Origin: Mytilus californianus
Taxonomy: Eukaryota
Length of the DNA stretch: 64,000 bases
Reading direction: 5' to 3'
NCBI RefSeq assembly: GCF_021869535.1
Contig: NW_026262615.1
Coordinates: forward strand, 6,696,001-6,760,000
Program-made: the position numbers and the translations under genes
The notes under the pieces: generated by a model
The model's database searches: none
What the model was told of the DNA's origin: nothing
Seen by the model: only the letters and a program-made list of their open reading frames with translations
Shown: positions 12,810-48,266 of the stretch, piece after piece
Numbering within the stretch: position 1 is the first letter of the stretch
Layout of the letters: every line of letters begins with the position of its first letter

Positions 12810-14450
12810 CGGTGACCTCAACATTGTCTATAACACTTCTTTGCGAAATGTGTTATCCAAATGTCCGAAATATCGCGAGTCTAAATCCATCAATTGGACA
12901 TACAACATAAAAATACTGATGGATTCAGTCAAAGGATTATGCCAGACAATGGGCTAAACGCGAAAAAGAAGACATAGACACTCTTTTCGAATGGATTAAG
13001 GCTGTGTGGTCGTTGATACAAATCGGAATTAAGAAACTGAATAGGTCTATCAATACCTATGCTACGTCAATCTTTAAAGACCCAGATGTTGCAAAACACT
13101 TGTCCTACCTTCATGACAAATATGTTTTTGTCCCCGCAGATAAAGCCCCAAACAACATCGTTTTTGTGTGTAAATCTCACCACATAAACTGCTTGATAAA
13201 TGAATTAGGAACTTGGAAATTCAACATATACCCTCACGACACTTACCAAAGAGGAAATCCTGATTAATCATAGGTCTGTTCTATGTTCCTTTGAAATTTC
13301 AACCAAAGATGAAGAACTGGATCTTCCATCACTGTATTGGATACCTAAACTACATAAGAGTCTTTACAAACAATGGTATACTGCTGGGTCTTCTAAGTGC
13401 TCCACGAAACCTCTTTCTAAATTATTAACATCTATTTTATCAACAATCAAAGCCGGGCTTCAAAGTTATTGTGAAACTGCCTATTCTAGAGGTGGCGTGA
13501 ATCAGATGTGGATACTAAAAGATTCCAAAGATCTTTTAGAGTACATACAATCTAAGATTCTTTCATATTACAATAGTATTAAACATTTGACCTTTCTACA
13601 CTTTACACAAGTATACCCCATTCAAAACTAAAATACAAATTGAAAGAGTTGGTATTGCCTTGTTTCATAAAAAGGAATGGCCAAAGTAAAAACAAGTATC
13701 TTGTCTTAGGGAGGGATAAATCCTACTTTGTAAAGAATCACTGTGATTCAAACAAAAAATTCTCTGAAACTGACATTATCAAGATGCTTGATTTCTTGAT
13801 TGACAACATATTTGTAACGTTTGGAGGAAGAGTTTTTCAACAGACTGTCGGCATTCCAATGAGAAACAATTGTGCCCCTCTTCTTGCCGACTTGTTCCTT
13901 TATCATTATGAGGCTGACATCATAGAGGAACTTCTGAGGAAGAAAAAAGAGAAGTTAGCAATATCCTTAAACTTTACTTTCCGCTATATATATATGATAT
14001 TCTCCCACTAAATAACTCAAATTTGGTGACTATGTTGAACGCATCTATCCCATCGAACTAGATTTAAAGGATACAACAGATACAGTTAAGTCTGTTTCAT
14101 ATCCTGACGTCCATCTAGAAATTGACAATGAGGGTCGGTTGAAAACAAAACTTTACGACAAAAGAGATGATTTCAGCTTTCCAATTGTGAACTTTTCATT
14201 TCTATGTAGCAACATTCCGGCTGCGCCAACATACGGAATATGTATCTCCTAATTGATACGATATTCCCGGGCTTGTTTTTCCTATCATTATTCCCTTGAA
14301 AGAGGGTGGCTGCTTACAAGGAAGCTATTAAACCAAGAGTTCCAAATGGCGAAGTTGATATCATCCCGTCGTAAATCTTACGGACGCCATCACGAGTTGG
14401 TTGACCGTTATGGAATAACCGTTTCACTGATGATATCGGATATGTTCCCC
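12810..14450 (+). pseudogene. Penelope-like reverse transcriptase, frameshifted
   Basis: ORF pieces 13004-13267, 13640-14011 and 14253-14591. Motifs VFVPADKAPNNIVFVCK, FQQTVGIPMRNNCAPLLADLFLY (QxxGxPMG-like), FRYI followed by a TA expansion that disrupts YIDD, and KTKLYDKRDDF...LIRYSRAC. No GIY-YIG endonuclease seen. Confidence 0.85.
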
Positions 14451-15072
14451 TTCCCTTTTCACAAATGCGACCTACCGAATAAGACTATTTACCGGGTTTG
14501 TAATAACATGAGCATTACGAAGGTTGCCACATGTGGAGCAGGATCTGCTTACCCTTCTGGAGAACCTGAGATCACCCCCAGTTTTTGGTGAGGTTCGTGT
14601 TGCTTAGAATTTAGTCTTCTATGTTGTGTCTTGTGTACTATTATTTGTCTGTTTATCTTTTTCTTTTTTTAGCCATGGCGTTGTCAGTTTTTTTTCGATC
14701 GATGAGTTTGACTGTCCCTCTGGTATCTTTCACCTCTCTTTTCGATCTGCTAGTCAAATGCGTTTTGTTCAAATATACTTTTCCACTTTTTTGGTGTTTT
14801 GGAAAATGTTGTTTGCGCTGTATTTAGGCCCATCTACCAAGAAATATGTTTTGCATGCACACGTATAAAAATTGCGGTTTTTATCCAACGCAATCACAAG
14901 TTTGAACGTTGTTTTCAATTCAGACTTGTTTATATTTTTCGTTTGGGCTTGTATTATATTTTCCTTTGGGTTTATATGATCCGTTCATCCTATTGCTACT
15001 CTTTAAAATTCAAGAGTCTATCCAAAATTGATGTAAATTATATGGCCTTCCAAATACCGTTTCGATCCCTAA

Positions 15073-22111: not shown

Positions 22112-22499
22112 ATTACAACATACAAGTAAGACTAAGTAAGTTTGCACTCGAGAGAAAATAAACCACACAGATTGTATCTAAGATATCGAAAGTTAAAATT
22201 TCAAACGAAAGCAAAGAATGACTTTTCCAACAATGATGATGATAAAATTCAAACCATGTTAGAATTGTCCCTCAGTTTTATATAAGAATGAAATCGATCC
22301 ACTTTGTTTTTATTTTTTCCAATCAAACTTGTCCCTTCTTTTTTGGTTCATGGCTTTCAATTTACGCAGTTTTTTTCCTGGAAGAAAAAGAATAAATAAA
22401 TGACCAGCCGCACTGTCTTACATGTGTGATATTTCGACTGAGTGTGGATTAACATGGTGGGTGATATATCAATGTCGTAATAAATTCAAAATTGGAAAA

Positions 22500-24298: not shown

Positions 24299-25729
24299 AA
24301 CATTGTATTAATGTCGACCATAACTTCTGGTTGTCATAATGAATGAAAAGATTATGGGGGAAATCTACCTGATTTATTGTCCAAATTGTCTACTGATTTG
24401 TTGTTGGATCCTTTGTTTGAGTGACGGCATGATTCTGTAAAAAGATATGAACAATATACAATCTCATTGACTCAAGATTTCGCTAAATACAGTGAGACTT
24501 TTATAGACCCATCTTGACTATCAGTAATTGTTTTATAAATAAAGGCAATAGTAGTATACCGCTGTTCAATAGTCATCAATCTATATAATAACTGAAACAA
24601 ATCCGAGTCACAAACCAAAACTGAGGGAAACACATCAACTATAAGAGGAAACAAAACGGAACAACAGAAACACTGGACTGCTACAAAAACAAACGCCAAC
24701 ATACATAGAAACGGACTATGTGATAACAACTGCCATATTCCTGACTTGGTACAGGACATTTTAAGAAAAAATTGTGGGTTGAACCTGGTTTTATGGCTAG
24801 CCAAACCTCCCGCATATATTGCAATGTTAAACATACCGCTAAAATGACAACATTACGTTACAGAAACACAGTACGAATAAATGCAAGAACTTTCAGAACA
24901 GAGAAATACGTAAATAAATAATTAAATAGTACATTTCAACATGCAAACCACAGAATAACAACAAACACCTAATGTCACATTAAACTTTTTTCTTATTTGG
25001 ATAGTAATGGCATATCCTTGAATTATTCTATTAAACCTATTAACAACTTAAACAAACTTAGAATGATAAATGCAAGCGTGAAATGTTGTATGGATACCTG
25101 TCTAGTAAGGAAGACTGAGTGTATGTTACCCTGTAGCTTTTTTGGTTTATTTTTGTTTTTTGGTTGGGAAAATAGATTTATAAATACTTTTCAGAATAAC
25201 AGTATCAATTTATCATGTTAGCAAAAATCAGCTTCAGCTTTGAAATAAAGATGTTTACCACCGGGTCGATGACCCAAGGGTATCACCACGCCAGTTATCA
25301 GCACTTTCATGTTGACATGATATATAAATAATTTGTTCATTTTCTGTCAATTCATGATTCAGGGGATTTAATGAAATAAGTGATTTTTAAATCACTCATT
25401 TGAGTAGCAAATTAGAAATTCTGTGATTTTGTAGTTTTGCCAAAAACACACAGGTTGAGATTATATCTAATTATTTGAAAAAAATAATAAAAAATACTGT
25501 TAGGTAGCATTGTTTACGCCTTCTATGCAATCATTCTTCTGTAAATTCTAAAATTGTTGAAAATAATGCTACAATGAAGGCTTTACATAATGATCTTATA
25601 CTTTCCAAACAGATTTTTCCCATGAGTGGGCGTATTTTTCTGTAAAATTCAAGGTTTCGGTTTTTAGATAATGTAATAAAATTTTACTGTTCGCTATAAA
25701 AAATTAACTGTTCGGGGATGTTGAAAATA

Positions 25730-26415: not shown

Positions 26416-26574
26416 CTGGACATTTTCCTAAGTTGCAAAGTGATGTTTCAGTTCTGGAACCAACACATTTCAGTCCATCGTCAGACGGTGGGGGATTGTC
26501 ACATGTTCTGGTTTTCACTATCACACCATCTCCACAAGTAACAGAACATGAGGAGTTGAACCAAAGGCTCCATC
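26416..26574 (-). CDS. Thrombospondin type-1 repeat (TSP1) exon
   Basis: GWSLWFNSSCSVTCGDGVIVKTRTCDNPPPSDDGLKCVGSRTETSLCNLGKCP carries the WSxW, CSVTCG, RxC and CP motifs; 159 bp, phase 1-1, pyrimidine tract before AG, GTAAAT donor. Confidence 0.93.
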
Positions 26575-27559: not shown

Positions 27560-27714
27560 CTGGAATTATGCAGCCTGTCATGTTAAAATTGCGAATATCT
27601 ATGGTGGTATTCAAACCAGTACATGTTCCTATGTAAACAAGGTTTGTTTGATTTGATGCCCATTCTTTAAAATCAATCATGCGGCAGCATATGAATTGGT
27701 TTCTGTTCATATTC
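27560..27714 (-). CDS. LRR C-terminal cap (LRRCT)-like exon
   Basis: TTTAAG|G AAT ATG AAC AGA AAC CAA TTC ATA TGC TGC... = NMNRNQFICCRMIDFKEWASNQTNLVYIGTCTGLNTTIDIRNFNMTGCIIP(G), resembling NPFxCxC...FxxW...C...C. 155 bp, phase 2 in and phase 1 out (CCAG|GTAAG), consistent with both neighbours. Confidence 0.85.
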
Positions 27715-28009: not shown

Positions 28010-28090
28010 AACACAAATTATTATAATTATAATTCTGTTTTCGAGAACAGACCTTCTGGTAAATTTATTAAGAAGTTACCCTGAAAAGTT
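28010..28090 (-). pseudogene. Last LRR module, with in-frame stops
   Basis: TTATAG|A ACT TTT CAG GGT AAC TTC TTA ATA AAT TTA CCA GAA GGT CTG TTC TCG AAA ACA GAA TTA TAA...TT|GTAAGC (81 bp). Confidence 0.75.
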
Positions 28091-29221
28091 CTATAAGAAA
28101 ATCAATAGTCATGAATGAAAATCTGAATTAGAACACTGTTGCTAAAATTACCAAAAATTCCAAATGCCGTTCTCCGTGTATTCAAAAGATAAATATATTT
28201 TTCTTAGAACTGATATTGCTTGAACAGCAATATTTGATTATTGAACGACATTAAAAGTTAAATAAAGAAGTACAAATGAATTGTGCGTAAACAATAAAAT
28301 GATGGTAAACCTGCTGCGTTGTTTGCACACAAGAATATTTTGAAGAACATCAGTTATATATGTGCATGATTAGATATGCAATACAATCTACCATATGATA
28401 AGGTAAACATGATAAGTCGTAGATAAACTTAAGACACTAATACTCAAATTATCAAAAAAATATAACAAAAATACTGAACTACAAGGCAAGTTCAAAAAGG
28501 GGAAGTCCATAAAATCAGACAAAATCAAACGCTATCAAACAATGGAATAATTAAAAACAACTGCCATTTTCCTGACTTGGAAGACAATCATGTATCATGA
28601 TTGAGTAAGAATATATTCAATCAAGACAATGGTTCTTGAATTACGCAAGATTTCAAAGGCTTACCTTGAAATATAGAATGAGATTAGGAGTAAAATGAGT
28701 ATGTACATTATAGATATAATTAATATTGAAGTCAAATGTCACATTCGTGGTTTGAAATCACCACTTCAGTGTTGACAGGCTTGTGATACAGTAGATAAAT
28801 AAGTTAGACTACCCGGTATCCCTTAAATGTATAGACGAACATCAACTATATATGATCGTTATAGGAATATGATAAAATAAAGGCTAAGGTGATAGTCATC
28901 ACACTTACAAAAGTCGAAGCTTTGTGTTCGATGATAACAGACCAACTGGTAAACTTACTTCTATGTAACAACTTGTTTAATCAAGACAATAATACTCAAA
29001 TTACCAAAAGGAACTCTAGGAGAAATTTTGAAATATTGAATACAATTAAAAGTTAAATAAGCATGTAAGAAAGATATGTTTTAGATAATAAAATGTTGAT
29101 AAACCTTCTGAGCTATTGGCACAGAAGAATATTGAAGAACACATGGTACATATGAATGAGGTTAAAAATTCCATCAATAATAGATAAGTTTAAGTCTGAT
29201 ATGAATATAAATTACACTAAC

Positions 29222-29293
29222 AAATATCTAAGATTTGTGTTGTTAGAAATCAGACCTTCTGGTAAAGTTACTAACTTTTTTTCGTGTAAATAC
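29222..29293 (-). CDS. Intact array LRR exon (72 bp), conserved Asn replaced by Lys
   Basis: CTTCCAG acceptor, GTTAGT donor, YLHEKKLVTLPEGLISNNTNLRY(L). Confidence 0.75.
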
Positions 29294-30404: not shown

Positions 30405-30476
30405 AATGTATTAAGATTCGTGTTCGACAAAAACAGATCTTTTGGTAAACTTTCTAACATGTTATTAGTTAAATCT
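30405..30476 (-). CDS. Intact array LRR exon (72 bp)
   Basis: CTTCCAG acceptor, GTAAGT donor, DLTNNMLESLPKDLFLSNTNLNT(L). Confidence 0.88.
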
Positions 30477-32185
30477 CTGGAAGAAAATCAAGTATCATGA
30501 TTATGTAAGAACAGGTTACATTAAAGCACTGATACTGAACTTACCAAAGATTACCAATTTGATCTCCTTGTATTCAATGAGTGTATACTGGTGATAAACC
30601 TGCTGAGCTATTGACTAACAAGTATATTTAAACCCCTTCATATAGGAACATCATAAAAAATAATCCAATATAATATTTTAATAATAAGTGTAAGTCTGGC
30701 ATATTGAAGATTGGTGTTCAACATGTTCAATGTTAACTGACCTTCTGGTAAACTTTCTAACTTGTTATTCATTAAATAACTAATAGAAAATCAAGGATCA
30801 TTAACACACCCAATTTATCTTCATATATTCAAACTACCAAACATTTTAAAGCTTGATCTTGAGTTATTCAACCGATCAAATATATTTGTCTTCCACCTGA
30901 TATGATAGATAAAAAGGAATTCTAAGATTAATTTTGAAATATTGAATAACATTAAAAGTTAAATTGGCATATAAAAAGGAAGTCTGACATATTGAAGATT
31001 GGTGTTCAACATGTTCAATGTTAAATGACCTTCTGGTAAAATTTCTAACTTGTTACTCATTAAATAATTAATAGAAAATCAATGATCATGAAAATCCTTA
31101 ATTTATCTTCTTATATTTTCATTACCATACATTTTAAAGGTTGATCGTAAGTTATTCAATCGATCAAATATATTTGTCGTCCACCTGATATGATAGATAA
31201 AATTGGTATTGCTTTAAAATTCAAACATAAAAAAATGAACTGAATTAAAAAAGAATGATGGCAAAACTGCTGAGTTCTCAACACACAAGTATTTTGAAGA
31301 AAATCAGATATGTGTACGTGATTAATTATACAATATAATCTAAAACACAATTAAGTCCTAAGATGATCACAATTCATACATACAATGTTTTAATTTTTGT
31401 GTTGTTAGAAAACATATGAACGAGGTTAAGAATTCCACACACTATTAAATAAGTTTAGGTCTGATATAAATATCAATTACACTTAAAATTCTATAGGATT
31501 CATGTTGAACAGAAACAAATCTTCTGGTAAAGTTACTAACTTGTTATGCCTTAAAAATCTGGAAGAAAATCAAATATCTTGATTGTGTAGGAACATGTAA
31601 AATAAAAACACTGATACTAAACTTACCAAAGAATACCAATTTGATCTCCTTGTATTCAATAAGTTTATAATTGTGATAAACCGACTGAGCTATTGGCACA
31701 CAAGTATATTAAAACCCCTTTATATAGGATAGGAACATGATCAACAATAATCCAATATAACCTTTTAATAAGTTTAAGTCTGACATATTGAAGATTTGTG
31801 TTCAACATGATCAATGTTAACTGATCTTCTGGGAAGTTTTCTAACTTGTTATTCAGTAAATATCTAATAGAAAATTGATGATCATGAACATAGTTACTTA
31901 ATTAACCTACTTATATTCAAATTACCAAACATTTCAAAGGTTGATCTTCAGTTATTCAATGGATCAAATATATGTGTCATCAACCTGATATTGTTGATGT
32001 GATTTTCATTGCTTTAAAAATCAACATTATTGAACGAAATTAAAATAGAATGATGACAAAACTACTGAGTTCTCGGCACACAAGTATATGTAAGAACATC
32101 AGATGTATGTGTACGTGATTAGATATACAATTTAAATAATATAATATGTAAGAAAAAGTCTGAGATGAGCATAAATCATACTTAC

Positions 32186-32257
32186 AATCTTTCAAGTTTT
32201 GTGTTGCTAGAAAACAGACCTTCAGGTAAAGTTATTAACTTGTTCTGGCGTAAAAAT
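32186..32257 (-). CDS. Intact array LRR exon (72 bp)
   Basis: CTTTCAG acceptor, GTAAGT donor, FLRQNKLITLPEGLFSSNTKLER(L). Confidence 0.88.
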
Positions 32258-34021
32258 CTGAAAGGAAGTCAACTATCTTGATTTTGTAAGAACATGTTAA
32301 ATTAAAACACCGATACCGAATTTACCAGAGATTACCAAATTCGATCCCAGTGTATTGAAAAGATGAAATATATTTTTCTTCAAACTGACATTGTTGATGC
32401 ATTTTAATAAGCTTCAACTGCAATCTTTAATCAATGAGTGACATTGAAACTAACATTAAGTATGCACAAAGGAAGTTTGCCAATAAAATGAAATTAAGTT
32501 AGACCTTCTGAGTTGTCAACAGACAAGTATATTGAGGAATATCAGTTATATATGTACGTGATTATATAAACAACACAATCTTTCATAAAATAAAGTCTGT
32601 GATAAACATTATTCACAATTACTTGTAACTTGGTGTTTGATAATAACAGACTACCTGGTAAACTTTCCTTGTTGTCTTTGGTTACAATTTTGGAGTATAA
32701 TCAAGCATCTTAATTATGTAAGAACATATTCAATCAAGACAATTATATTCAAATTACCAAAAGGAATTCTAAGATTAATTTTGAAATATTGAATAACATT
32801 AAAAGTTAAATTAGCATATAAAAAGGAAGTCTGACATATTGAAGATTGGTGTTCAACATGTTCAATGTTAAATGACCTTCTGGTAAACTTTCTAACTTGT
32901 TACTCATTAAATAATTAATAGAAAATCAATGATCATGAAAATGCTTAATTTATCGTCTTATATTTACATTACCATACATTTTAAAGGTTGATCTTAAGTT
33001 ATTCAATCGATCAAATATATTTGTCGTCCACCTGATATGATAGATAAAGTTTGTATTGCTTTAAAATTTAACATAAAAAATGAACTTAATTAAAAAAGAA
33101 TGATGGCAAAACTGCTGAGATCTCAACACACAAGTATTTTGAAGAAAATCAAATATGTGTACGTGATTAAATATACAATATAATCTATAACACAATTAAG
33201 TCCTAAGATGATCACAATTCATACATACAATGTTTTAATTTGTGTGTTGTTAGAAAACATATGAACGAGGTTAAAAATTCCACACACTATTAAATAAGTT
33301 TAGGTCTGATATAAATATCAATTACACTTAAAATTCTATAGGATTCATGTTGAACAGAAACAAATCTTCTGGTAAAGTTATTAACTTGTTATGCCTTAAA
33401 AATCTGGAAAAAAAATCAAATATCTTGATTGTGTAGGAACATGTTAAATCAAAACACTGATACTTAACTTACCAAAGATTACCAATTTGATCTCCCTGTA
33501 TTCAATAAGTTTATCATTGTGATAAACCTGCTGAGCTATTGGCATACAAGTATATTAAAACCCCTTTATATAGGAACATGATTTGCAATAATTTAATATA
33601 ATCTTTTAATAAGTTTAAGTCTGACATATTGAAGATTGTGTTCAACAAGTTCAATCTTAACTGACCTTTTGGGAATTTTTTTAACTTGTTATTAAGTAAA
33701 TATCTAATAGAAAATCAATGATCATGAATATACTTAATTAACCTACTTAAATTCAAATTACAAAACATTTCAAAGGTTGAACTTCAGTTGTTCAATGGAT
33801 CAAATGTAATTGTGATCAACCTGATATTGTTGATGTAATTTTCATTGCTCTAAAATTCAACATTATTTAAGGAAATTAAAATAGAATGATGACAAAACTA
33901 CTGAGTTATCGGCACACAAGTATATGTAAGAACAGCAGATGTGTGTCTACGTGATTAGATATACAATTTAAATAATATAATATGTAAGAAAAAGTCTGAG
34001 ATGAGCATAAATCATACTTAC

Positions 34022-34093
34022 AATGTTTTAAGTTTAGTGTTGTTAGAAAACAGACCTTCTGGTAAAGTTACCAACGCGTTATTCTCTAAATCT
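34022..34093 (-). CDS. Intact array LRR exon (72 bp)
   Basis: CTTCCAG acceptor, GTAAGT donor, DLENNALVTLPEGLFSNNTKLKT(L). Confidence 0.88.
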
Positions 34094-34720
34094 CTGGAAG
34101 ACAATCAATTATCATGATTATATAAGAACATGTTACATTAAAGCACTAATTCTGAACTTACTAAAGATTATCAATCTGATCTCCTTGTATTCAATAATTC
34201 TATAATAGTGATAGACCTGCAGAGCTATTGGCACACAAGTATATTAAAACCCCTTTATATAGGATAGGAACATGATTTGCAATAATTTAATATAATCTTT
34301 TAATAAGATTAAGTCTGACATATTGAAGATTTGTGTTCAACATGATCAATGTTAACTGATCTTCTGGGAAGTTTTCTAACTTGTTATTCAGTAAAAATCT
34401 AATAGAAAATTGATGATCATGAACATAGTTAATTAATTAACCTACTTATATTCAAATTACCAAACATTTCAAAGGTTGATCTTCAGTTATTCAATGGATC
34501 AAATATATGTGTCATCAACCTGATATTGTTGATGTGATTTTCATTGCCTTAAAAATCAACATTATTTAACGAAATTAAAATAGAATAATGACAAAACTAC
34601 TGAGTTCTCGGCACACAAGTATATGTAAGAACAGCAGATGTGTGTGTACGTGATTAGATATACAGTTCAAATAATATAATATGTAACTTAAAGTCTGAGA
34701 TGAGCATAAATCATACTTAC

Positions 34721-34792
34721 AATCTTTCAAGTTTTGTGTTGCTAGAAAACAGACCTTCAGGTAAAGGTCCTAACTTGTTTTCGTATAAATAT
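34721..34792 (-). CDS. Intact array LRR exon (72 bp)
   Basis: CTTTCAG acceptor, GTAAGT donor, YLYENKLGPLPEGLFSSNTKLER(L). Confidence 0.88.
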
Positions 34793-35775
34793 CTGAAAGG
34801 AAGTCAAATATCTTGATTTTGTAAGAACATGTTAAATTAAAACACCGATACCGAATTTACCAGAGATTACCAAATTCGATCTCCGTGTATTGAAAAGATG
34901 AAATATATTTTTCTTCAAACTGACATTGTTGATGCATTTTTATAAGCTTCAACTGGAATCTTTAAACAATGAGTGGCATTGAAACTAACATTAAGTATGC
35001 ACAAAGGAAGTTTGCCAATAAAATGAAATTAAGGTAGACCTTCTGAGTTGTCAACAGACAAGTATATTGAGGAATATCAGTTATATATGTACGTGATTAT
35101 ATAAACAACACAATCTTTCATAAATAAAGTCGTGATAAACATTATTCACAATTACAATTCTTGTAACTTGGTGTTTGATGATAACAGACTATCTGGTAAA
35201 CTTTCCTTGTTGTCTTTGTTTACAATTTTGGAGTAAAATCAAGCATCTAAATTATGTAAGAACATATTAAATCATGACAATTATATTCAAATTACCACAA
35301 GGAATTCTAAGATTAATTTTGAAATATTGAATAACATTAAAAGTTAAATTAGCATACAAAAAGGAAGTCTGACATATTGAAGATTTGTGTTCAACATGTT
35401 CAATGTTAACTAACCTTCTGGGATGTTTTCTAACTTGTTATTCAGTAAATATCTAATAGAAAATTGATGATCATGAACATAGTTACTTAATTAACCTACT
35501 TATATTCAAATTACCAAACATTTCAAAGGTTGATCTTCAGTTATTCAATGGATCAAATATATTTATCATCAACCTGATATTGTTGATGTGATTTTCATTG
35601 CTTTAAAAATCAACATTATTTAACGAAATTTAAAATAGAATAATGACAAAACTACTGAGTTCTCGGCACACAAGTATATGTAAGAACAGCAGATGTGTGT
35701 GTACGTGATTAGATATACAGTTCAAATAATATAATATGTAACTTAAAGTCTGAGATGAGCATAAATCATACTTAC

Positions 35776-35847
35776 AATGTTTCAAGTTTTGTGTTGCTAG
35801 AAAACAGACCTTCAGGTAAAGTTACTAACTTGTTTCCGTATAAATAT
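35776..35847 (-). CDS. Intact array LRR exon (72 bp)
   Basis: CTTTCAG acceptor, GTAAGT donor, YLYGNKLVTLPEGLFSSNTKLET(L). Confidence 0.88.
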
Positions 35848-36212
35848 CTGAAAGGAAGTCAAATATCTTGATTTTGTAAGAACATGTTAAATTAAAACAC
35901 CGATACCGAATTTACCAGAGATTACCAAATTCGATCTCTGTGTATTGAAAAGATGAAATATATTTTTCTTCAAACTGACATTGTTGATGCATTTTAATAA
36001 GCTTCAACTGCAATCTTTAAACAATGAGTGACATTGAAACTAACATTAAGTATGCACAAAGGAAGTTTGCCAATAAAATGAAATTAAGGTAGACCTTCTG
36101 AGTTGTCAACAGACAAGTATATTCAGGAATATCAGTTATATATGTACGTGATTATATAAACAACACAATCTTTCATAAAATAAAGTCTGTGATAAACATT
36201 ATTCACAATTAC

Positions 36213-36284
36213 AATTCTTGTAACTTGGTGTTTGATGATAACAGACTATCTGGTAAACTTTCCTTGTTGTCTTTGGTTACAATT
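36213..36284 (-). pseudogene. LRR pseudo-exon with dead acceptor (TCCAA); copies at 35156, ~32623 and 29659
   Basis: Open frame IVTKDNKESLPDSLLSSNTKLQE with GTAATT donor; acceptor AG mutated to AA. Confidence 0.78.
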
Positions 36285-36927
36285 TTGGAGTATAATCAAG
36301 CATCTTAATTATGTAAGAACATATTCAATCAAGACAATTATATTCAAATTATCAAAAGGAATTCTAAGATTAATTTTGAAATATTGAATAACATTAAAAG
36401 TTAAATTAGCATATAAAAAGGAAGTCTGACATATTGAAGATTGGTGTTCAACATGTTCAATGTTAAATGACCTTCTGGTAAACTTTCTAACTTGTTACTC
36501 ATTAAATAATTAATAGAAAATCAATGATCATGAAAATCCTTAATTTATCTTCTTATATTTACATTACCATACATTTTAAAGGTTGATCTTAAGTTATTCA
36601 ATCGATCAAATATATTTGTCGTCCACCTGATATGATAGATATAATTTGTATTGCTTTAAAATTCAACATAAAAAAATGAACTAAATTAAAAAAGAATGAT
36701 GGCAAAACTGCTGAGTTCTCAACACACAAGTATTTTGAAGAAAATCAGATATGTGTACGTGATTAAATATACAATATAATCTATAGCACAATTAAGTCCT
36801 AAGATGATCACAATTCATACATACAATGTTTTAATTTTTGTTTTGTTAGAAAACATATGAACGAGGTTAAGAATTCCACACACTATTAAATAAGTTTAGG
36901 TCTGATATAAATATCAATTACACTTAA

Positions 36928-36999
36928 AATTCTATAGGATTCATGTTGAACAGAAACAAATCTTCTGGTAAAGTTACTAACTTGTTATGCCTTAAAAAT
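36928..36999 (-). pseudogene. LRR pseudo-exon with dead donor (TTAAGT); same lesion at 33332-33403 and 31487-31558
   Basis: Intact AG and open frame FLRHNKLVTLPEDLFLFNMNPIE, but the donor reads TTAAGT instead of GTAAGT. Confidence 0.8.
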
Positions 37000-37626
37000 C
37001 TGGAAGAAAATCAAATATCTTGATTGTGTAGGAACATGTTAAATCAAAACACTGATACTAAACTTACCAAAGAATACCAATTTGATCTCCTTGTATTCAA
37101 TAAGTTTATAATTGTGATAAACCTGCTGAGCTATTGGCTCACAAGTATATTAAAACCCCTTTATATAGGATAGGAACATGATTAACAATAATCCAATATA
37201 ACCTTTTAATAAGTTTAAGTCTGACATATTGAAGATTTGTGTTCAACATGATCAATGTTAACTGATCTTCTGGGAAGTTTTCTAACTTGTTATTCAGTAA
37301 ATATCTAATAGAAAATTGATGATCATGAACATAGTTACTTAATTAACCTACTTATATTCAAATTACCAAACATTTCAAAGGTTGATCTTCAGTTATTCAA
37401 TGGATCAAATATATGTGTCATCAACCTGATATTGTTGATGTGATTTTCATTGCTTTAAAAATCAACATTATTGAACGAAATTGAAATAGAATGATGACAA
37501 AACTACTGAGTTCTCGGCACACAAGTATATGTAAGAACAGCAGATGTATGTGTACGTGATTAGATATACAATTTAAATAATATAATATGTAAGAAAAAGT
37601 CTGAGATGAGCATAAATCATACTTAC

Positions 37627-37698
37627 AATTTTTCAAGTTTTGTGTTGCTAGAAAAAAGACCTTCTGGTAAAGTTATTAACTTGTTATCCGATAAATTT
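37627..37698 (-). CDS. Intact array LRR exon (72 bp)
   Basis: TTCCAG acceptor, GTAAGT donor, open frame NLSDNKLITLPEGLFSSNTKLEK(L). Confidence 0.88.
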
Positions 37699-38399
37699 CT
37701 GGAAGGAAATCAAATATCTTGATTATAGATCATTTAACACTAAAACACTGATACTGAACTTACCAAAGATTACCTACTTTGAACTCCATGTGTTCAATAG
37801 ATAAATAAATTTTTCTTTAAACTGACATTGTTGATGCAATTGTTTAAGCTTTACTGCCACCTTTAAATGTGAGCGGCATTTAAAGTAAGATTAGTATGCA
37901 CAAAGGAAGTTCTTTGGATACCAGAATATGTCTAATATACTTAATTAACCTACTTATATTCATATTACCAAACATTTCAAAGGTCTATCTTCAGTTATTC
38001 AGTGGATCAAATATATTTGTCATCTATACTCATAATTTATTAGACATTAAAATCATTTGATTGAACACCATAATAAGATTGATCGACATAATAATGGACT
38101 GGACTACATGTCAACTGTAAAACAAAACGAAATCCCGTCCAACATCTGAAAAAGGGAATGTTTAAAACATGCCTCATTAAAACTACCATACTCCAATGTA
38201 AATTCAAAAATTCATAAGATGTTCCGAGGAACCTTGTGTCTCGCGATTGCTGCTGTCAGTCTAAAAGTGTAATGATGACATAAAAAGTGATAGCCTAGTC
38301 AATTTAGCTCTAATATTACTCAACCTGCAATTAATTGCAACACAAGATTTGTTTAAGTGTAAATTAGAACATAGACTTGTACTAAAAACATATAATAAA

Positions 38400-39694: not shown

Positions 39695-42600
39695 TCACAT
39701 TATATGTATTCTTGTAGTTATCAATAACAATAGTGATATAATTTTTGTGTGAAGTATTTTGTTTTCGGAATAAATTACAAAAAAACAATTAAATTGCAAA
39801 TCTTGGTTATTTCTTAATTTGAATAGGGTAAAATAGAGAATGGAAAGCAGGAACGTGGCAAAGAGAAAACAACCCGACCAACAGCAGAACCCAGCCCAAG
39901 GCCACCACTGGGTCTTCATCGCAGCGAGAAAATATGGCACCCGGAGGCGAGCTTTAGTCGGCCCTTAAGAATAATGTATACTAGTTCAGCAAAATGGACG
40001 CCACACTAAATTCCACAACATTCAAATCAACCAAAATTATAAAAAAAAAAACACACAACACTAACAATTGGCTAGAATTTCCTGACTTTGGACAAACGCA
40101 AAAATACGGCAGGGTTAAACATGTTTCGCGAGATCTCAACTCTCCCTCTATACCTCTAACAATGTGGAATAAACAAAAACACAGCAGTACGCGCAGTAAA
40201 ACCAAGATAAAAAGAAGTAGGTTTTGTTGAAGTTTGGACATTTTATCTCATGTTTCTGTGATAAATTTATAGTAATTTTGTAGGTATAATAAACAAAAAA
40301 ATGTTTAATTGTGGTTCAAAAATTACTTAAAATTAGTTGATTTTTGTCATAATAATTGCTGAAAGAGTTATTTCACTAGTGTCCTTGCTTCACAATTGAC
40401 TGTTGTCCTTTTGTTTTGTATTTTTTCATTAGCTACTTTTACAACATTTGAATTACTAGACGAGTGACATTAACCATAAAATTTTATTTTTAATGCATCC
40501 ACTTAACATACGGCTAAATCATATACCATTCGAAAACACATCATCTGCACAAACCTTTTTTGCCCGGTCGTCAAAAATTCGTATGGTGTAGTTTCTGTCA
40601 AATCGCAACGAAAGGTCAAGTACGGACAACTTCTAATTTTACAAGAAGTCAGCATGTTTTGCATATTCTGTCTTCTGAATAATGATATTTTGTATGTACA
40701 TATGGAAATCTGTTAGAACAGATGTTAATAGTAACTTATCAAAAGCACTTTGAAAAATTCATGTCGGATTTTTAATAAATAGCGCTGTTTTCCAGAAATT
40801 CCATTGAAAATGACAAAAATGCATGAAAATCAAATTTTATGTCTGTGATTCAACTATTATTTACCATAAAACTAAATAACATATTTCATTTAGTGCTAAG
40901 GGTGTTTTTGACATCATTAAATTACTGCAATTACGCTTCTTGTTAATTAAACAGCCAATTATAACAACCGTGCAGTTGCCCAAATATCGCCATCTGCAAG
41001 AAAATAGCTTCTTTAGCTGTTCTTTGTTATAACAATTTGTATGTAGTCGATATTATGTTGAAAAACACAAATTTTAAAACTGCAAAAATGTTAAAGGATA
41101 GAATACACAGAAAATTCGTGCATTTAGGGAAAAGTTTGGGAGCGAAACTTTGATAATTCAATATTTCAATATGTGTATGTTTTCTTGGTTGATTATACTG
41201 CATCTTGCATTGAATGAGGAAGCGAAAACTATTATAAGCTAGCCACTGAAATGGTCTTCATGCCAGGCCAATATATTTAATCCTATCCAGCTACGTAATC
41301 TCTTGTAAATACATTGAGACCCTCGCAATTATATTTACTTACATTAATTTTTGAATTGGGAAATCTAGCAATTCGCAATAACAATACATACATTTCCATT
41401 AATCAAATTTACTCCCTGAATAGTTTACACATAAATACATTTTAATATAAAGATGATTGATTGATTGTTGGTGTTTGACGCAATTTTCGGTTTAGAACTT
41501 TTGGCTTCTAAAGTATTTTGAGGCGATCAGTTTTCAATGGTTTAGGCCCATGGAATGCCCATGGAATGCCCAAGGAACCACCAACCTTCGGAAGGAAAAC
41601 TGCCAATCCCCATCAACAATACATTAGTTATAGCTATTAGTATCAAGGACGAAGTTACTGTGTAGGTGTCACAACACAAATGTACCAATCAGCATTGATC
41701 ACCTTTTGTAAAAGTAGGCAACCTCTAACCAAACACAGTAGTGTTAATGTTGATGTTTACTTCAGCTAAATGTTACAAGTAAAGTTTTCTTAATAGAAAC
41801 AAAAATATAAATGCATTTGAACCACTTTTATTTCAAATTTAATTGGCCATGATTTTGCATTACTATTTCAATGTAGGTTTGCCACATAATATTTTCATTT
41901 TAGGCATTTAAAAAAAAAGAGCATGATCTACTATTTAAGTAGATAATCTATTAAGCATTGGTTGATCATTGGCATATTAAAGATAGTACGTGTATATTAA
42001 AAATACATATGGTTAAAATGAAGTTATTTTATTCTAAGATATCTATACAATTGTGAAAAATGAAAAAAATTGTGGTTGAATTTATCCAGTTTTTTTAATC
42101 GGTTTTATGTAATCTGATCTTAAATTATGTTCGTGAATATTTATTGTGCACTGAGCCCTCTGTTATTGATCTGACAGCGACTTTTTGCGATTTTCTCACT
42201 TTATTTTCATATTTTTCAGTTCAAGTTTCTAATGGTGCGAAGATCTCACAACAATAATAAGTGATTTAAGTTGACATGAAAAAAAAACCGTACAAAATGT
42301 TATGTATCAGTGTTAAAACATGGGTTTAAACAATCTGATTAAAATTTAGATCAATCACGACTCGCCTGCCCATATATCGTGTGATAAAAACAAAATCATA
42401 GAACTAAATTTTAATAAGATTAGGGTTAACTTAATGAGATAGCTTGAAAGCAGGTATGTTCTGGTAAATTTAAAGCGATTACCGTTTTTAGCGCTATTTG
42501 AATATGTCTATTATGAAACAAATCCCTTCACGTATAACCTCCATATGTGCACTTTGAACTTCCATAATTCTGCCAAGCAATGTCGAAGGAATATTGCTCT

Positions 42601-45269
42601 TTACAATTTTGAGAATAACATATGGATATGTGAATGGAAAGAACAAAAGAAAAAAAGGACATAAGGACAAGATGATTCCTACATTTCCGCTATATCATAT
42701 AAAGATAGATAGAGATGGAGAGAGAACTACGAGGTCTATCACAACTGTTTTCCAATCGTTTGATGTGTTTCAGCTTTTGGTTTTGATATGTGATAAGAGA
42801 CTTTCTGTTTTGAAATTTCACTTGGAGCTCGGTAATTCATGTTGTTTTACTAACTTATTTTTTGCATCAATATCTGAGTTTTAAGTTCTGTTGTCTTTTT
42901 TCGCTCAGCTTTGATTTATGGTTTTCTTTTCTTTGATTGAAAGAAGGGATAAAATAATATGAAGGCAGTCTCAAACCATGGTCGAAGAAAAACAGACGAC
43001 AACATGACCATGGCGAAAAAGTAAGACAGACAAGCAAATCTTCTCAAAACACTATACCGAATTGTATGAACAATACGTAAACCAGTACGGTGATTACAGT
43101 TGTTCATGAAGGTTATTTAATCTTAATCAATCTGAATTATTAATTTTCAGTCATATTTAATAAAACAACTAACAAAGTATATCATAATGGGTTAACATAA
43201 AAAAGAATTCGCCGAATTTGACATTGAAAATCGCATGGTACAGACATTTTTCTTTCGAACATTGAACGAGCATAATCTTCGTAACATGTCTTTTCACATC
43301 GGGAAACTAATTTTTACCAAATATACTTCTTTTATTCTTTAAAGTTCTTCCATAACCTTTTTTTAAATATGGTTGATCATCACCTGCCGATATTAGCAAT
43401 ATTATCTAGCAAAAAAAAAGCTAGATGATCCCCATTTGCAGATGGTGTTTTTTGGGGCAACTACCAAAGCTTCATTAGAAGGCTGCATCTGGACCTACAT
43501 CATATTAATTGCAGTTTAAAATGACGAAAAATTTCCTCGGTCCATAAACAATAAATCTATTCTATTTTTGACATACAAATATTCAAATGTCAGAAAACAT
43601 TAAGATTTTATTGCAATTTTATCATTTTTTGGAAGTTTTTTCAAGAAATGCCATTTTTTGTTAATATAGCGCAATCAACATTTAAGTTTGCACTTGATTT
43701 GAAATCATGGTAATTTGTTTTATAAGGTTTAGATCAATTTTAGGGAATAAAATGCCATACAAGTACCTGAAAATGGCATTTTGTGTAATTATAGCAAACA
43801 TTTGGAATGCTCGGTTTAGACCTTTGACCTTGGTTTAACGAAAATTGCACCGTACGAATTATTGACGACTGGGCAAAAATGAAAGTACAGATAATAAGCT
43901 TTCGAATGATGTGTAATATAGCCGTATGTTAGGTGGGTGCATTAAAGTCGTTAATTAAGCGTCTTTTTGAAAATTGTCACTCGCCTATACATAGTGTCAA
44001 AGTTAAAAACAGATCACGTGATTGTAGTTTTTTTTTTCTTTATCGGTTGCTAATTTTATTAAGCAAGCTCTGTCAATATCAACGTTTAATTTCAGAAATA
44101 TACGGTTTTTAGATTTGGGAATATATTCTATTACACTGAATTAGCATGAAATATAGATCTTATATTGTTTAAAAGCAATTCCAAGGACAGCATTGTCAAT
44201 ACGAATATGAGATTGCCTCAAGTTCTTGAATTTAAAACGTAATGGTACCAAAGTAGTCCAATTTTAGATGTTGAATATGAGATGAACAGGGAAAATATTA
44301 TCTTACGAAATTCAGAGACAAAGATATGCATTCAGTGGTCAGTTGATCAAATACATCCACGCCATTTTGACTCTGGTTGATAGCTGCCCTGATGGAAAGC
44401 ATACCACACCTTCTCATTTCTATAGTGTGGGGGTTTTCGGACAAGAAAACATTAGGCAGTTCTGACAGTTTCCTTAGGAAAAAAATGTCAGAGTGGTACA
44501 AGGAATTTAATACAAATTTAATGTTGGAGTATTTAAACGAAAAAAAAAAAAAAAAAATAGTAAACATCTTCATTAAAGGGCATTAACTCTAATAAGGGGC
44601 CATCAGACGATCTTAACCATGCTGATTCATTTGTAGAACTAATCTTGCTGATCATTTTTGCTATATAAAGTTTCTCTCTATCTATTATAATTTTAAGATA
44701 ATGGGCAAAAATTTAAAAAGTTATTGACATTTTGGAAGTAAATGTACAATAAGTAAATTTCACAATTCCAAATGTTTCTGCCCTTGTCAAATTTTCTCTT
44801 TTTATAGTGGTTTTCAAGATAATAAACAAAACTTGCATTTTACACCTATGTTTTTTTTAGACATGTCGGCCATCTTGGTTGACAGGCAGCGTCATTGGCA
44901 ACATTTTCTAAACTAGATACCCTTTAAAATGAATTTGGCCAATTGTGGTTAAGTTTGGATCAGTAGTTTCAGAGAAGAAGTATTTAGTAAAAGCTAACGA
45001 CGACGGAGGACGGACGAAAATGTTGAGAATAATAGGCAAAAATAGAAAAAAAAATAAGTCAATTTTTCAGATTAATACGGAAAAGAAGAAATAAATATTT
45101 TCAACATTTTGCTCTGAATACTGTATTTTGGTCATAACAAAGCTTCTGTCCAAATTTCCCACAAATCTATGAAGCTTTCACGAAGTCATTGATGACTGAC
45201 GGTAATTACTTGTTAACTGTAAAACTAGAGGCTCGTCTGCATCTTCAGCAATAGCCACTTTTAAGTAAT

Positions 45270-47187: not shown

Positions 47188-47259
47188 AAGATTATAAGGG
47201 ATGTTAAACCAGAAAGCGCATTTGTTCTTACTGTTGTTAAGTTATTTCTACGAAGACTT
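47188..47259 (-). CDS. LRR receptor gene, first LRR exon (72 bp)
   Basis: CTTTCAG|A AGT CTT CGT AGA AAT AAC TTA...ATC TT|GTAAGT; SLRRNNLTTVRTNALSGLTSLII(L); phase 2-2, matching the previous exon. Confidence 0.9.
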
Positions 47260-48102: not shown

Positions 48103-48266
48103 AAAATTGTTGTAGTTGAAGAAATATCTGTATGCGGTATTTCATCAAAACTCCTTCCGGAACAATCAATTAGTGTACCAGTACATGAACAAGATGAAGG
48201 ACATCCATTAACTAAATCCCCTTTCAACAGGCGTATAAACAACATAACTGCAACTGACATCAACAT
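48103..48266 (-). CDS. LRR receptor gene, first coding exon: signal peptide plus LRR N-terminal cap (LRRNT)
   Basis: Manual translation MLMSVAVMLFIRLLKGDLVNG-CPSSCSCTGTLIDCSGRSFDEIPHTDISSTTTI(L): hydrophobic leader then the CPxxCxC...xDCSxxxxxxIP LRRNT pattern. Ends TT|GTAAGT (phase 2). Upstream acceptor TATTACAG at 48309-48308 gives 41 nt of 5'UTR in this exon. Confidence 0.92.

What the first reader, a model, noticed from the sequence alone, without database searches (positions are those of the whole stretch)
31380..37700. ~1.85-kb higher-order repeat carrying one live exon and five dead ones per unit
The module order (donor-deleted, GT>TT, truncated, double-dead, AG>AA, intact) recurs. Offsets: 37627 to 35776 = 1851; 34022 to 32186 = 1836; 33332 to 31487 = 1845. 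A shortened unit lies at ~34720-35780. The same lesions are shared by copies, so inactivation preceded amplification. Each gain or loss of a unit by unequal crossing-over would add or remove one in-frame LRR, giving allelic variation in solenoid length (inference).
Basis: partly seen in the sequence, partly recalled or inferred. Interest (0 to 1): 0.7.

Follow-up and report, generated by a model that had tools for sequence, protein, structure and literature searches.

The report
Mussel LRR gene's higher-order exon repeat
Inside a California-mussel gene for a secreted leucine-rich-repeat/thrombospondin protein, a 1.85-kb block holding one usable 72-base exon and five disabled ones has been copied in tandem, and near-identical gene copies differ by exactly one block, so the protein can gain or lose one repeat at a time; whether this copy is expressed could not be tested.

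Summary
On the minus strand, 37.9-30.4 kb is a higher-order repeat of six exon-derived modules in fixed order (B-C-D-E-F-I). Modules are 63-80% alike; whole units are 92-99%.

Only I has AG, 72 nt, an open frame and GTAAGT. One label needs correcting: B is not donor-deleted. It keeps AG and a weak GT but is 79 nt long, so it shifts the frame.

The window holds two full 1.85-kb units, two recombinant short units (1,055 and 699 bp) and one older unit.

The host gene looks complete: signal peptide/LRRNT, LRR exons, LRRCT, TSP1 and a basic tail.

Six paralogous arrays in the same genome show the same lesions, so inactivation came before amplification. They carry 5-12 I exons. A copy 142 kb away, about 99% identical, differs by exactly one 1,850-bp unit.

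I exons show selection that the dead modules lack. A RefSeq model at the chromosome-154 paralogue splices almost only I exons.

RefSeq's protein at this locus (137 aa) omits the LRR exons.

The scan had noted this gene family on other DNA, but not this repeat.

The parts
48103..48266 (-). Exon 1: start codon, signal-peptide-like N-terminus and LRRNT cysteine cap. It ends in phase 2 before GTAAGT.
   Evidence: tblastn to the M. edulis relative P0062. Sequence and donor read. Pfam LRRNT, E 4.2e-6, 26.7 bits against a cut-off of 25.8.
47188..47259 (-). Exon 2: a 72-nt LRR exon of a different subtype (SLRRNNLTTVRTNALSGLTSLII).
   Evidence: AG/72 nt/GTAAGT scan, tblastn, sequence context.
37627..37698 (-). 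I exon (intact), the first of the array: NLSDNKLITLPEGLFSSNTKLEK.
35776..37626 (-). Full higher-order unit 1 (1,851 bp), modules B-C-D-E-F-I. B 37304-37226; C 36999-36928; D 36853-36825; E 36509-36431; F 36284-36213; I 35847-35776.
34721..35775 (-). Short unit B-F-I (1,055 bp). B 35452-35374 carries an in-frame TAG, and its downstream flank is E-type, so it is a B/E recombinant. F 35227-35156; I 34792-34721.
34022..34720 (-). Short unit B-I (699 bp). B 34398-34320; I 34093-34022.
32186..34021 (-). Full higher-order unit 2 (1,836 bp). B 33703-33626 (78 nt); C 33403-33332; D 33257-33229; E 32914-32836; F 32689-32623 (67 nt); I 32257-32186.
30405..32185 (-). Older, diverged unit (1,781 bp). B 31863-31785; C 31558-31487; D 31412-31384; E 31067-30989; E' 30779-30701 (keeps AG, donor position reads GCCAGA); I' 30476-30405 (intact).
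29222..29293 (-). I'' exon: 72 nt, AG and GTTAGT, open frame (YLHEKKLVTLPEGLISNNTNLRY). An F-type dead module lies upstream at 29730-29659.
28909..28958 (-). 5'-truncated LRR module: only the 3' half, with a GTAAGT donor.
28022..28090 (-). Dead terminal LRR module: 69-nt equivalent, in-frame TAA at 28029-28027, no GT at the donor position.
27560..27714 (-). LRRCT exon (NMNRNQFICC...CIIP), entered in phase 2 and left in phase 1. RefSeq's protein at this locus starts at the Met at 27680.
26416..26574 (-). Thrombospondin type-1 repeat exon.
   Evidence: Pfam TSP_1, E 2.8e-11. Splice context. 100% match to XP_052085498.1.
24369..24434 (-). Tail exon 1 (ESCRHSNKGSNNKSVDNLDNKSG).
22310..22377 (-). 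Tail exon 2, basic C-terminus with the stop codon (KKLRKLKAMNQKRRDKFDWKK*).

Best explanation
What it is. The stretch is the middle of a Mytilus californianus gene on the minus strand, spanning 48.3-22.3 kb of the window. The gene encodes a secreted protein with this layout: signal peptide and LRRNT, then 24-residue LRRs each on its own 72-nt phase-2 exon, then LRRCT, one thrombospondin type-1 repeat and a short basic tail.

How it arose (inferred). An ancestral run of six differentiated LRR exon-plus-intron modules lost five of its exons. The causes were splice-site mutation, truncation or a 2-nt loss. Because all LRR exons share one phase, skipping any of them leaves the frame intact. The whole six-module, 1.85-kb block was then amplified by unequal homologous recombination.

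Recombination also occurred between similar modules inside the block. It produced the 1.06-kb B-F-I unit and possibly the 0.70-kb B-I unit. Each unit type still carries exactly one usable exon.

What is shown:
- the module anatomy;
- the same lesions in seven arrays;
- a one-unit difference between two copies that are about 99% identical;
- selection signals confined to the I exons.

What is inferred:
- that the spliceosome at this locus joins I exon to I exon and skips modules B to F;
- that unit number varies between alleles in the population.
For: Anatomy and periodicity.

Gene context:
- LRRNT exon, LRRCT, TSP_1 and tail.
- The exon phases are compatible. By exon coordinates the sum is 1,188 nt, or 395 codons plus a stop.

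Shared lesions in seven arrays.

I-exon integrity:
- 55 of 58 I exons keep AG, 72 nt, GT and an open frame.
- The three distinct indels in I exons are -3, +6 and -9 nt. The seven in dead modules are -1, -8, +1, -7, +1, -5 and +1 nt. My own Fisher calculation from these counts gives p = 1/120.
- There are no stop codons among 81 distinct substitutions in I exons, where 4.7 are expected (Poisson P of about 0.009).

Substitution pattern:
- pN/pS is 0.36 at the 17 framework codons and 1.97 at the six concave-face codons of I. It is 0.96-0.99 in pseudo-exons C and F.
- Across 22 complete units, the six concave-face codons have pi 0.25, against 0.034 for the other 1,769 columns (odds ratio 12.7, p 4.5e-7).

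Public annotation:
- RefSeq XP_052073140.1 sits at the paralogous array on contig C154. Five of its six LRRs are whole I exons joined in order, with every B-to-F module skipped, followed by LRRCT, TSP1 and tail. Its first LRR matches one I exon over only 16 residues.
- XP_052086286.1, at the array near 38.68 Mb, likewise skips the dead modules.

Unit dynamics:
- The window and the copy at 6.59 Mb differ by exactly 1,850 bp.
- I-exon counts across arrays are 5 to 12.
- The unit tree shows both shared units and array-specific block duplications.
Against:
- RefSeq's protein at this locus and at its twin (XP_052085498.1 and XP_052085499.1, 137 aa) begins at a Met inside the LRRCT exon. It contains no LRR exon.
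- The two arrays near 11.6 and 11.7 Mb probably carry short 136-147 aa models as well. I placed those only by 94-96% matches further downstream.
- So in four of the five young arrays, public annotation gives no support for translation of the I exons.
- A dead module with an in-frame TAA (28090-28022) lies just upstream of the LRRCT exon. If it were spliced in, it would end the frame.
- The pairwise pN/pS values use non-independent pairs. With distinct-variant counts, the contrast between I framework codons and pseudo-exons is only borderline (Fisher p 0.055). C and F also vary somewhat more at the same six codons.
- The selection signal could come from the family's past rather than from this copy's present.
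Confidence: 0.7

Rival explanations
1. The LRR part of this copy is a decaying relic. Only the 3' exons (LRRCT, TSP1, tail) are expressed, as a short 137-aa product. The I exons look intact only because the array is young and was copied from a working paralogue.
For: - The RefSeq proteins at the window and its twin lack all LRR exons. Short models probably also cover the two 11.6-11.7 Mb copies.
- A dead module carrying a stop lies directly upstream of the LRRCT exon.
- Units are only 1-6% diverged, so little time has passed in which decay could show.
Against: - A 137-aa product would have no signal peptide, although it carries extracellular-type domains.
- Exon 1, exon 2 and all seven I-type exons of the window are intact and phase-compatible.
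- Diversity is strongly elevated at the concave-face codons even between units that are otherwise 98-99% identical, including within the 11.6 and 11.7 Mb arrays.
- Indels in I exons are all multiples of three.
- Short RefSeq models can also result from sparse, 3'-biased RNA coverage. That is general knowledge, not tested here.
Confidence: 0.2
2. The unit count, or the one-unit difference between the two 142-kb-apart copies, is an assembly artefact. Possible causes are a collapsed or expanded repeat, or two haplotypes placed in series.
For: - The whole 64-kb window has a 99-100% identical copy 142-144 kb away, and two 98-99% identical inverted copies near 11.6-11.8 Mb.
- The 0.7-1.1% divergence is below the 2.73% heterozygosity reported for this individual (PMC9710001).
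Against: - The same module order is present in seven separately assembled loci with distinct variants.
- The assembly used 45x HiFi reads with N50 14 kb, plus purge_dups (PMC9710001). Reads of that length can span the 7.5-kb array.
- Units differ by 1-8%, which HiFi reads resolve.
Confidence: 0.07
3. The repeat is a dispersed satellite or a transposon-borne array that merely contains LRR-like sequence. It is not part of a gene.
For: The array occurs at seven places in the genome.
Against: - At all seven places a copy of the same exon 1 lies upstream and LRRCT and TSP1 matches lie downstream.
- At the arrays near 11.6 and 11.7 Mb, about 17 kb separates the last module I found from the LRRCT exon.
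- No transposon protein domain was found in or next to the array.
Confidence: 0.03

Closest known systems
Genes with one LRR per 72-nt, same-phase exon
   Same: - 24-residue typical LRRs, each on a 72-nt phase-2 exon.
- LRRNT and LRRCT caps.
- Exon duplication or skipping keeps the frame.
   Different: Here the exons sit in a higher-order repeat in which five of every six exon-derived modules are disabled. The whole block is the unit of amplification.
Mytilus LRR-TSP1 secreted proteins: RefSeq XP_052073140.1 ('carboxypeptidase N subunit 2-like'), XP_052085498.1 ('ectin-like'), M. edulis CAG-series and M. coruscus 'LRRNT domain-containing' proteins
   Same: - Same domain order.
- The window's four 3' exons encode XP_052085498.1 exactly.
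- The LRRs of XP_052073140.1 are the I exons of a paralogous array, five whole and one partial.
   Different: These are names assigned by similarity. No function is known, and the repeat structure of the genes has not been described, as far as two literature searches show.
LPA kringle IV-2 repeat (general knowledge): a multi-kb intragenic unit whose copy number sets protein length
   Same: A multi-kb exon-plus-intron unit is amplified in tandem inside a gene. Each unit adds an in-frame protein module.
   Different: - In LPA all exons of the unit are used. Here one of six is.
- Population copy-number variation is documented for LPA and untested here.
Higher-order repeats of alpha satellite, and the Olduvai/NBPF triplet (general knowledge)
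   Same: Diverged monomers (63-80% identity) in fixed order form a unit that is 92-99% identical between copies. Deletion-derivative units arise by recombination between monomers.
   Different: Here the monomers are exon-plus-intron modules of a protein-coding gene. The array is short, with 2-8 full units.
Intragenic unequal crossing-over that changes LRR number in plant resistance genes, and lamprey VLR cassette assembly (general knowledge)
   Same: LRR number varies, and residues on the concave face are hypervariable.
   Different: - No somatic rearrangement is indicated here.
- The repeats are separate exons rather than parts of one exon.
- An immune role is not shown.

Membership tests
Typical-type LRR protein with N- and C-terminal caps | Repeats of about 24 residues matching LxxLxLxxNxLxxLPxxLF | tested here: met
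   Translations of seven I-type exons. A single exon gives only a weak Pfam LRR_8 match (E 0.048), as expected for 23 residues.
Typical-type LRR protein with N- and C-terminal caps | LRRNT and LRRCT cysteine caps | tested here: met
   Exon 1 matches Pfam LRRNT above its cut-off.
Mytilus LRR-TSP1 secreted protein family | Domain order: signal peptide, LRRNT, LRRs, LRRCT, TSP1, basic tail | tested here: met
All parts were found in order and in compatible phases.
Mytilus LRR-TSP1 secreted protein family | Expression of the full-length form from this locus | not testable with these tools
RefSeq's model here covers only the 3' exons.
Higher-order repeat | Diverged monomers in fixed order, with unit-to-unit identity far above monomer-to-monomer identity | tested here: met
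   Monomers 63-80%. Units 92-99.9%. The order B-C-D-E-F-I recurs in 23 units across five arrays.
Higher-order repeat | Several consecutive identical-format units | tested here: inconclusive
   The window has two full units separated by two short derivative units, plus one older unit. Up to three full units lie in a row in the array near 11.73 Mb.
Copy-number-variable intragenic repeat (LPA KIV-2 type) | Unit number differs between alleles in a population | not testable with these tools
   Only one assembly was available. The near-identical copy 142 kb away differs by one unit, but whether it is an allele is unknown.
Cassette-donor diversification (VLR or pseudo-V type) | Sequence transfer from non-expressed cassettes into the expressed exon | tested here: inconclusive
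   One clear chimera was seen: a C module in the 11.73 Mb array whose 5' half is I-type. That shows exchange between live and dead modules, but in the I-to-C direction. No convincing dead-to-live tract was found.

The most novel reading that the evidence does not exclude
The dead modules are not just debris. By keeping long homologous spacers around each live exon, they would make the array prone to unequal recombination and gene conversion. The locus family would then produce secreted LRR-TSP1 proteins that vary between individuals both in repeat number and in concave-face residues. That would be a germline diversity device for a recognition molecule in an animal already known for extensive gene presence/absence variation.
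Probability: 0.12. Interest if true: 0.7.

Novelty: new variant of a known kind. Interest (0 to 1): 0.45.

Why it matters
The locus shows, in one place, how a solenoid protein can change length in single-repeat steps. Because all LRR exons share one phase, exons can die without harming the frame. A block of one live and five dead exons can then be amplified or lost as a unit.

Two copies about 99% identical that differ by exactly one unit catch this process in the act.

Selection signals are confined to the live exons, and diversity at their likely ligand-facing codons is about seven times that of the surrounding DNA. This points to a fast-evolving binding protein family in mussels that nobody has studied.

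It is also a warning for annotation. Four of the five young arrays carry only short 3' gene models in RefSeq.

The general mechanisms are well known: exon duplication, unequal crossing-over and LRR diversification. The interest is therefore moderate.

Tried and rejected
Tools that gave nothing or were unavailable:
- Tandem Repeats Finder found nothing, because the period is above its 500-nt limit.
- A plant-type LRR pattern found nothing. The repeats are the animal 'typical' type.
There is therefore no RNA or read-depth evidence.
The M. trossulus locus of XP_063405713.1 could not be fetched, so the lesions could not be dated in another species.
- Pfam gave nothing for the longer open frames outside the gene.
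- Two literature searches found no prior description of this repeat.

Searches with limited return:
- The representative-protein search with the TSP1 frame was dominated by proteins with many TSP1 repeats. Only four useful relatives came out of it.

- The joined spliced model was not searched or folded. Frame continuity was checked only from exon coordinates and phases.

Readings rejected:
- That B is 'donor-deleted'. The apparent 14-nt gap is an alignment artefact.
- That the array is a transposon or a satellite (see rivals).

Reading left open:
- That pseudo-exon C donated sequence to the I exon at 32257. The shared TTT first codon could equally be a single mutation.


Full report
ORGANISM AND LOCUS

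The window is G000:C35:6,696,001-6,760,000 of a 1.65-Gb genome in 175 contigs. RefSeq proteins labelled Mytilus californianus lie on a contig of exactly C35's length, 46,895,763 bp. Four exons of the window encode one of them without a mismatch. The genome is therefore the California mussel reference. It was assembled from 45x HiFi reads (N50 14 kb) with hifiasm, purge_dups and Omni-C, and the reported heterozygosity is 2.73% (PMC9710001).

THE OBSERVATION

The gene reads on the minus strand. A self-comparison of 26-42 kb gives long direct matches:

| Offset (bp) | Length (bp) | Identity |
|---|---|---|
| 3,589 | 2,441 | 94.4% |
| 5,442 | 1,573 | 95.2% |
| 2,535 | 1,767 | 90.1% |
| 1,054 | 1,505 | 92.5% |
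| 1,847 | 1,431 | 92.5% |

A profile built from the exon at 37698-37627 finds 33 related modules between 37.7 and 28.0 kb. Aligned in register, they fall into six types:

| Module | Acceptor | Body | Donor position | State |
|---|---|---|---|---|
| I | AG | 72 nt, open frame | GTAAGT | intact |
| B | TTAG | 79 nt | GTCAGA | would shift the frame |
| C | AG | 72 nt, open frame | TTAAGT | no donor GT |
| D | none | 29-nt 3' fragment | GTATGT | truncated |
| E | TTAA | 79 nt | GTCAGA | no acceptor AG |
| F | CCAA | 72 nt, mostly open | GTAATT | no acceptor AG |

The order along the gene is I | BCDEFI | BFI | BI | BCDEFI | BCDEE'I' | older modules. I-donor spacings are 1851, 1055, 699, 1836 and 1781 bp.

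Module types are 63-80% identical to one another. Whole units are 92-99.9% identical. That is the signature of a higher-order repeat.

- B is not donor-deleted. A pairwise alignment shows a 9-nt insertion and the loss of 2 nt just before a retained but weak GT. If spliced in, B would shift the frame.
- Its 27-residue form is in frame in a M. trossulus RefSeq protein, where it is the last LRR before LRRCT (P0127).
- The B of the 1,055-bp unit has an E-type downstream flank. That unit therefore arose by B/E recombination that removed C, D and part of E.
- The array extends beyond the stated coordinates in both directions.

THE HOST GENE

Mapping three Mytilus relatives and four M. californianus RefSeq proteins onto the window, and reading the splice contexts, gives this structure:

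| Part | Window coordinates | Evidence |
|---|---|---|
| Exon 1 (ATG, hydrophobic N-terminus, LRRNT) | 48266-48103 | Pfam LRRNT, E 4.2e-6 |
| Exon 2 (LRR, other subtype) | 47259-47188 | |
| I exons | start at 37698, 35847, 34792, 34093, 32257, 30476, 29293 | |
| Truncated module | 28958-28909 | |
| Dead module with in-frame TAA | 28090-28022 | |
| LRRCT exon | 27714-27560 | |
| TSP1 exon | 26574-26416 | Pfam TSP_1, E 2.8e-11 |
| Tail exons | 24434-24369 and 22377-22310 | |

- All LRR exons are in phase 2.
- The LRRCT exon converts phase 2 to phase 1.
- By coordinates, the exons sum to 1,188 nt, or 395 codons plus a stop.

THE SAME ARRAY ELSEWHERE IN THE GENOME

A 201-nt probe finds six further arrays:
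- C35 near 6.59 Mb
- C35 near 11.59 Mb
- C35 near 11.73 Mb
- C35 near 38.51 Mb
- C35 near 38.68 Mb
- C154 near 22.48 Mb

I fetched these and annotated them with the window's modules.

- The order B-C-D-E-F-I recurs in all five young arrays, giving 23 complete units.
- The 38.5 and 38.7 Mb arrays hold the same module types in a less regular order.
- I-exon counts are 6 (window, plus I''), 7, 11, 12, 10, 5 and 7.

Lesions are shared across arrays:
- C's TT donor is in 32 of 32 copies.
- F's CCAA is in 33 of 35 copies; the other two also lack AG.
- B's 79-nt body is in 48 of 51 copies. The three exceptions carry later 1- or 8-nt deletions.
- E's TTAA is in all 26 E copies inside the units of the five young arrays. 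The older E' copies and the two older arrays mostly keep TTAG.

So the five modules were disabled before the 1.85-kb block was amplified. E's acceptor was lost last.

A maximum-likelihood tree of the units shows two things. Some units are shared between arrays by position. Others come from array-specific duplications of multi-unit blocks. Amplification therefore continued after the loci had separated.

UNIT GAIN OR LOSS

The copy at 6.59 Mb aligns to the window in two collinear pieces: 99.34% identity over 17.2 kb and 98.88% over 12.7 kb. Their diagonals differ by exactly 1,850 bp, and they overlap on 1,759 bp of the window. This is the pattern expected when one unit is gained or lost in tandem.

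The extra unit's I exon is intact, so that copy would encode one more 24-residue repeat.

The entire 64-kb window is duplicated at a distance of 142-144 kb. It is duplicated again, inverted, near 11.6-11.8 Mb. The 0.7-1.1% divergence is lower than the individual's heterozygosity. I therefore cannot say whether the two copies are recent paralogues or haplotypes placed in series. Either way, unit number has changed very recently.

ARE THE I EXONS LIVE AND THE OTHERS DEAD?

Evidence for:
1. 55 of 58 I exons in seven arrays keep AG, 72 nt, GT and an open frame. Two of the exceptions are in-frame length variants.
2. The three distinct indels in I exons are multiples of three. None of the seven in B, C, E and F is. 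My Fisher calculation gives p = 1/120.
3. There are no stops among 81 distinct substitutions in I exons, where 4.7 are expected (P about 0.009).
4. pN/pS is 0.36 at the 17 framework codons of I, 1.97 at codons 1, 3, 4, 6, 22 and 23, and 0.96-0.99 in pseudo-exons C and F.
5. In 22 aligned units, those six codons have pi 0.25. The rest of the I exon has 0.059. The remaining 1,769 columns have 0.034 (odds ratio 12.7, p 4.5e-7). The dead modules have 0.024-0.080.
6. By the standard LRR model (general knowledge), those six codons are the solvent-exposed positions of the concave beta-sheet.
7. RefSeq XP_052073140.1 (346 aa), at the C154 array, runs from exon 1 through six LRRs to LRRCT, TSP1 and tail. 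Five of the LRRs are whole I exons joined in order, and every B-to-F module is skipped.

Evidence against, or caveats:
- RefSeq's protein at the window and its twin is 137 aa and begins inside the LRRCT exon.
- The two arrays near 11.6 and 11.7 Mb probably have short 136-147 aa models as well. Those were placed only by 94-96% matches further downstream.
- Counting distinct variants rather than sequence pairs weakens the contrast between I framework codons and pseudo-exons to p 0.055. C and F also vary somewhat more at the same six codons.
- No reads could be examined.

VERDICT

- Inactivation before amplification is supported.
- 'One unit equals one in-frame LRR' is supported by a direct one-unit difference between near-identical copies.
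- Allelic variation, and expression of this copy, remain untested.

This is a clear and unusually regular example of known processes, found in an unstudied mussel protein family.

Noticed in passing
window 1-64000; G000:C35:6.55-6.62 Mb and 11.51-11.79 Mb: The whole 64-kb window has a 99-100% identical direct copy 142-144 kb away, and two 98-99% identical inverted copies about 141 kb apart near 11.6-11.8 Mb. This is either a very recent large segmental duplication present four times, or haplotypes retained in the primary assembly.
   Followed up: partly
L007-L009 (C35:11.73 Mb array), gene-sense position about 14676: One C module is a chimera. Its 5' half, including the hypervariable codons, is I-type. 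Its 3' half, including the TT donor, is C-type. This shows gene conversion or crossing-over between a live and a dead module.
   Followed up: partly
window 33626-33703 (-): One B pseudo-exon has lost a further base. It is now 78 nt long, in frame, without a stop, and flanked by AG and GTCAGA. The same state is present in the 6.59 Mb copy. It could be a revived exon or an alternative exon.
   Followed up: no
L014-L015 (C154:22.486 Mb), RefSeq XP_052073140.1 residues 56-79: The first LRR of the RefSeq model joins the 5' 16 codons of one I exon, which has a 9-nt deletion in the assembly, to the 3' 8 codons of the I exon one unit downstream. This could be a mapping artefact among repeats, or a transcript from an allele with one unit fewer.
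   Followed up: no
window 40459-43988: About 3.5 kb in the intron between exon 2 and the first I exon is absent from the paralogues near 38.5 and 38.7 Mb. It is probably an insertion. No protein domain was found in it.
   Followed up: partly
window 12920-14588 (+): A run of overlapping open frames of 112-142 aa in shifting frames looks like a decayed mobile-element gene. Pfam gave no match at E 0.01.
   Followed up: partly
L004-L009: arrays near 11.59 and 11.73 Mb: Both arrays end abruptly inside a B module, at module position 130, where homology to the window stops. Their LRRCT exons lie about 17 kb further on. This suggests a large insertion or rearrangement shared by both copies.
   Followed up: partly
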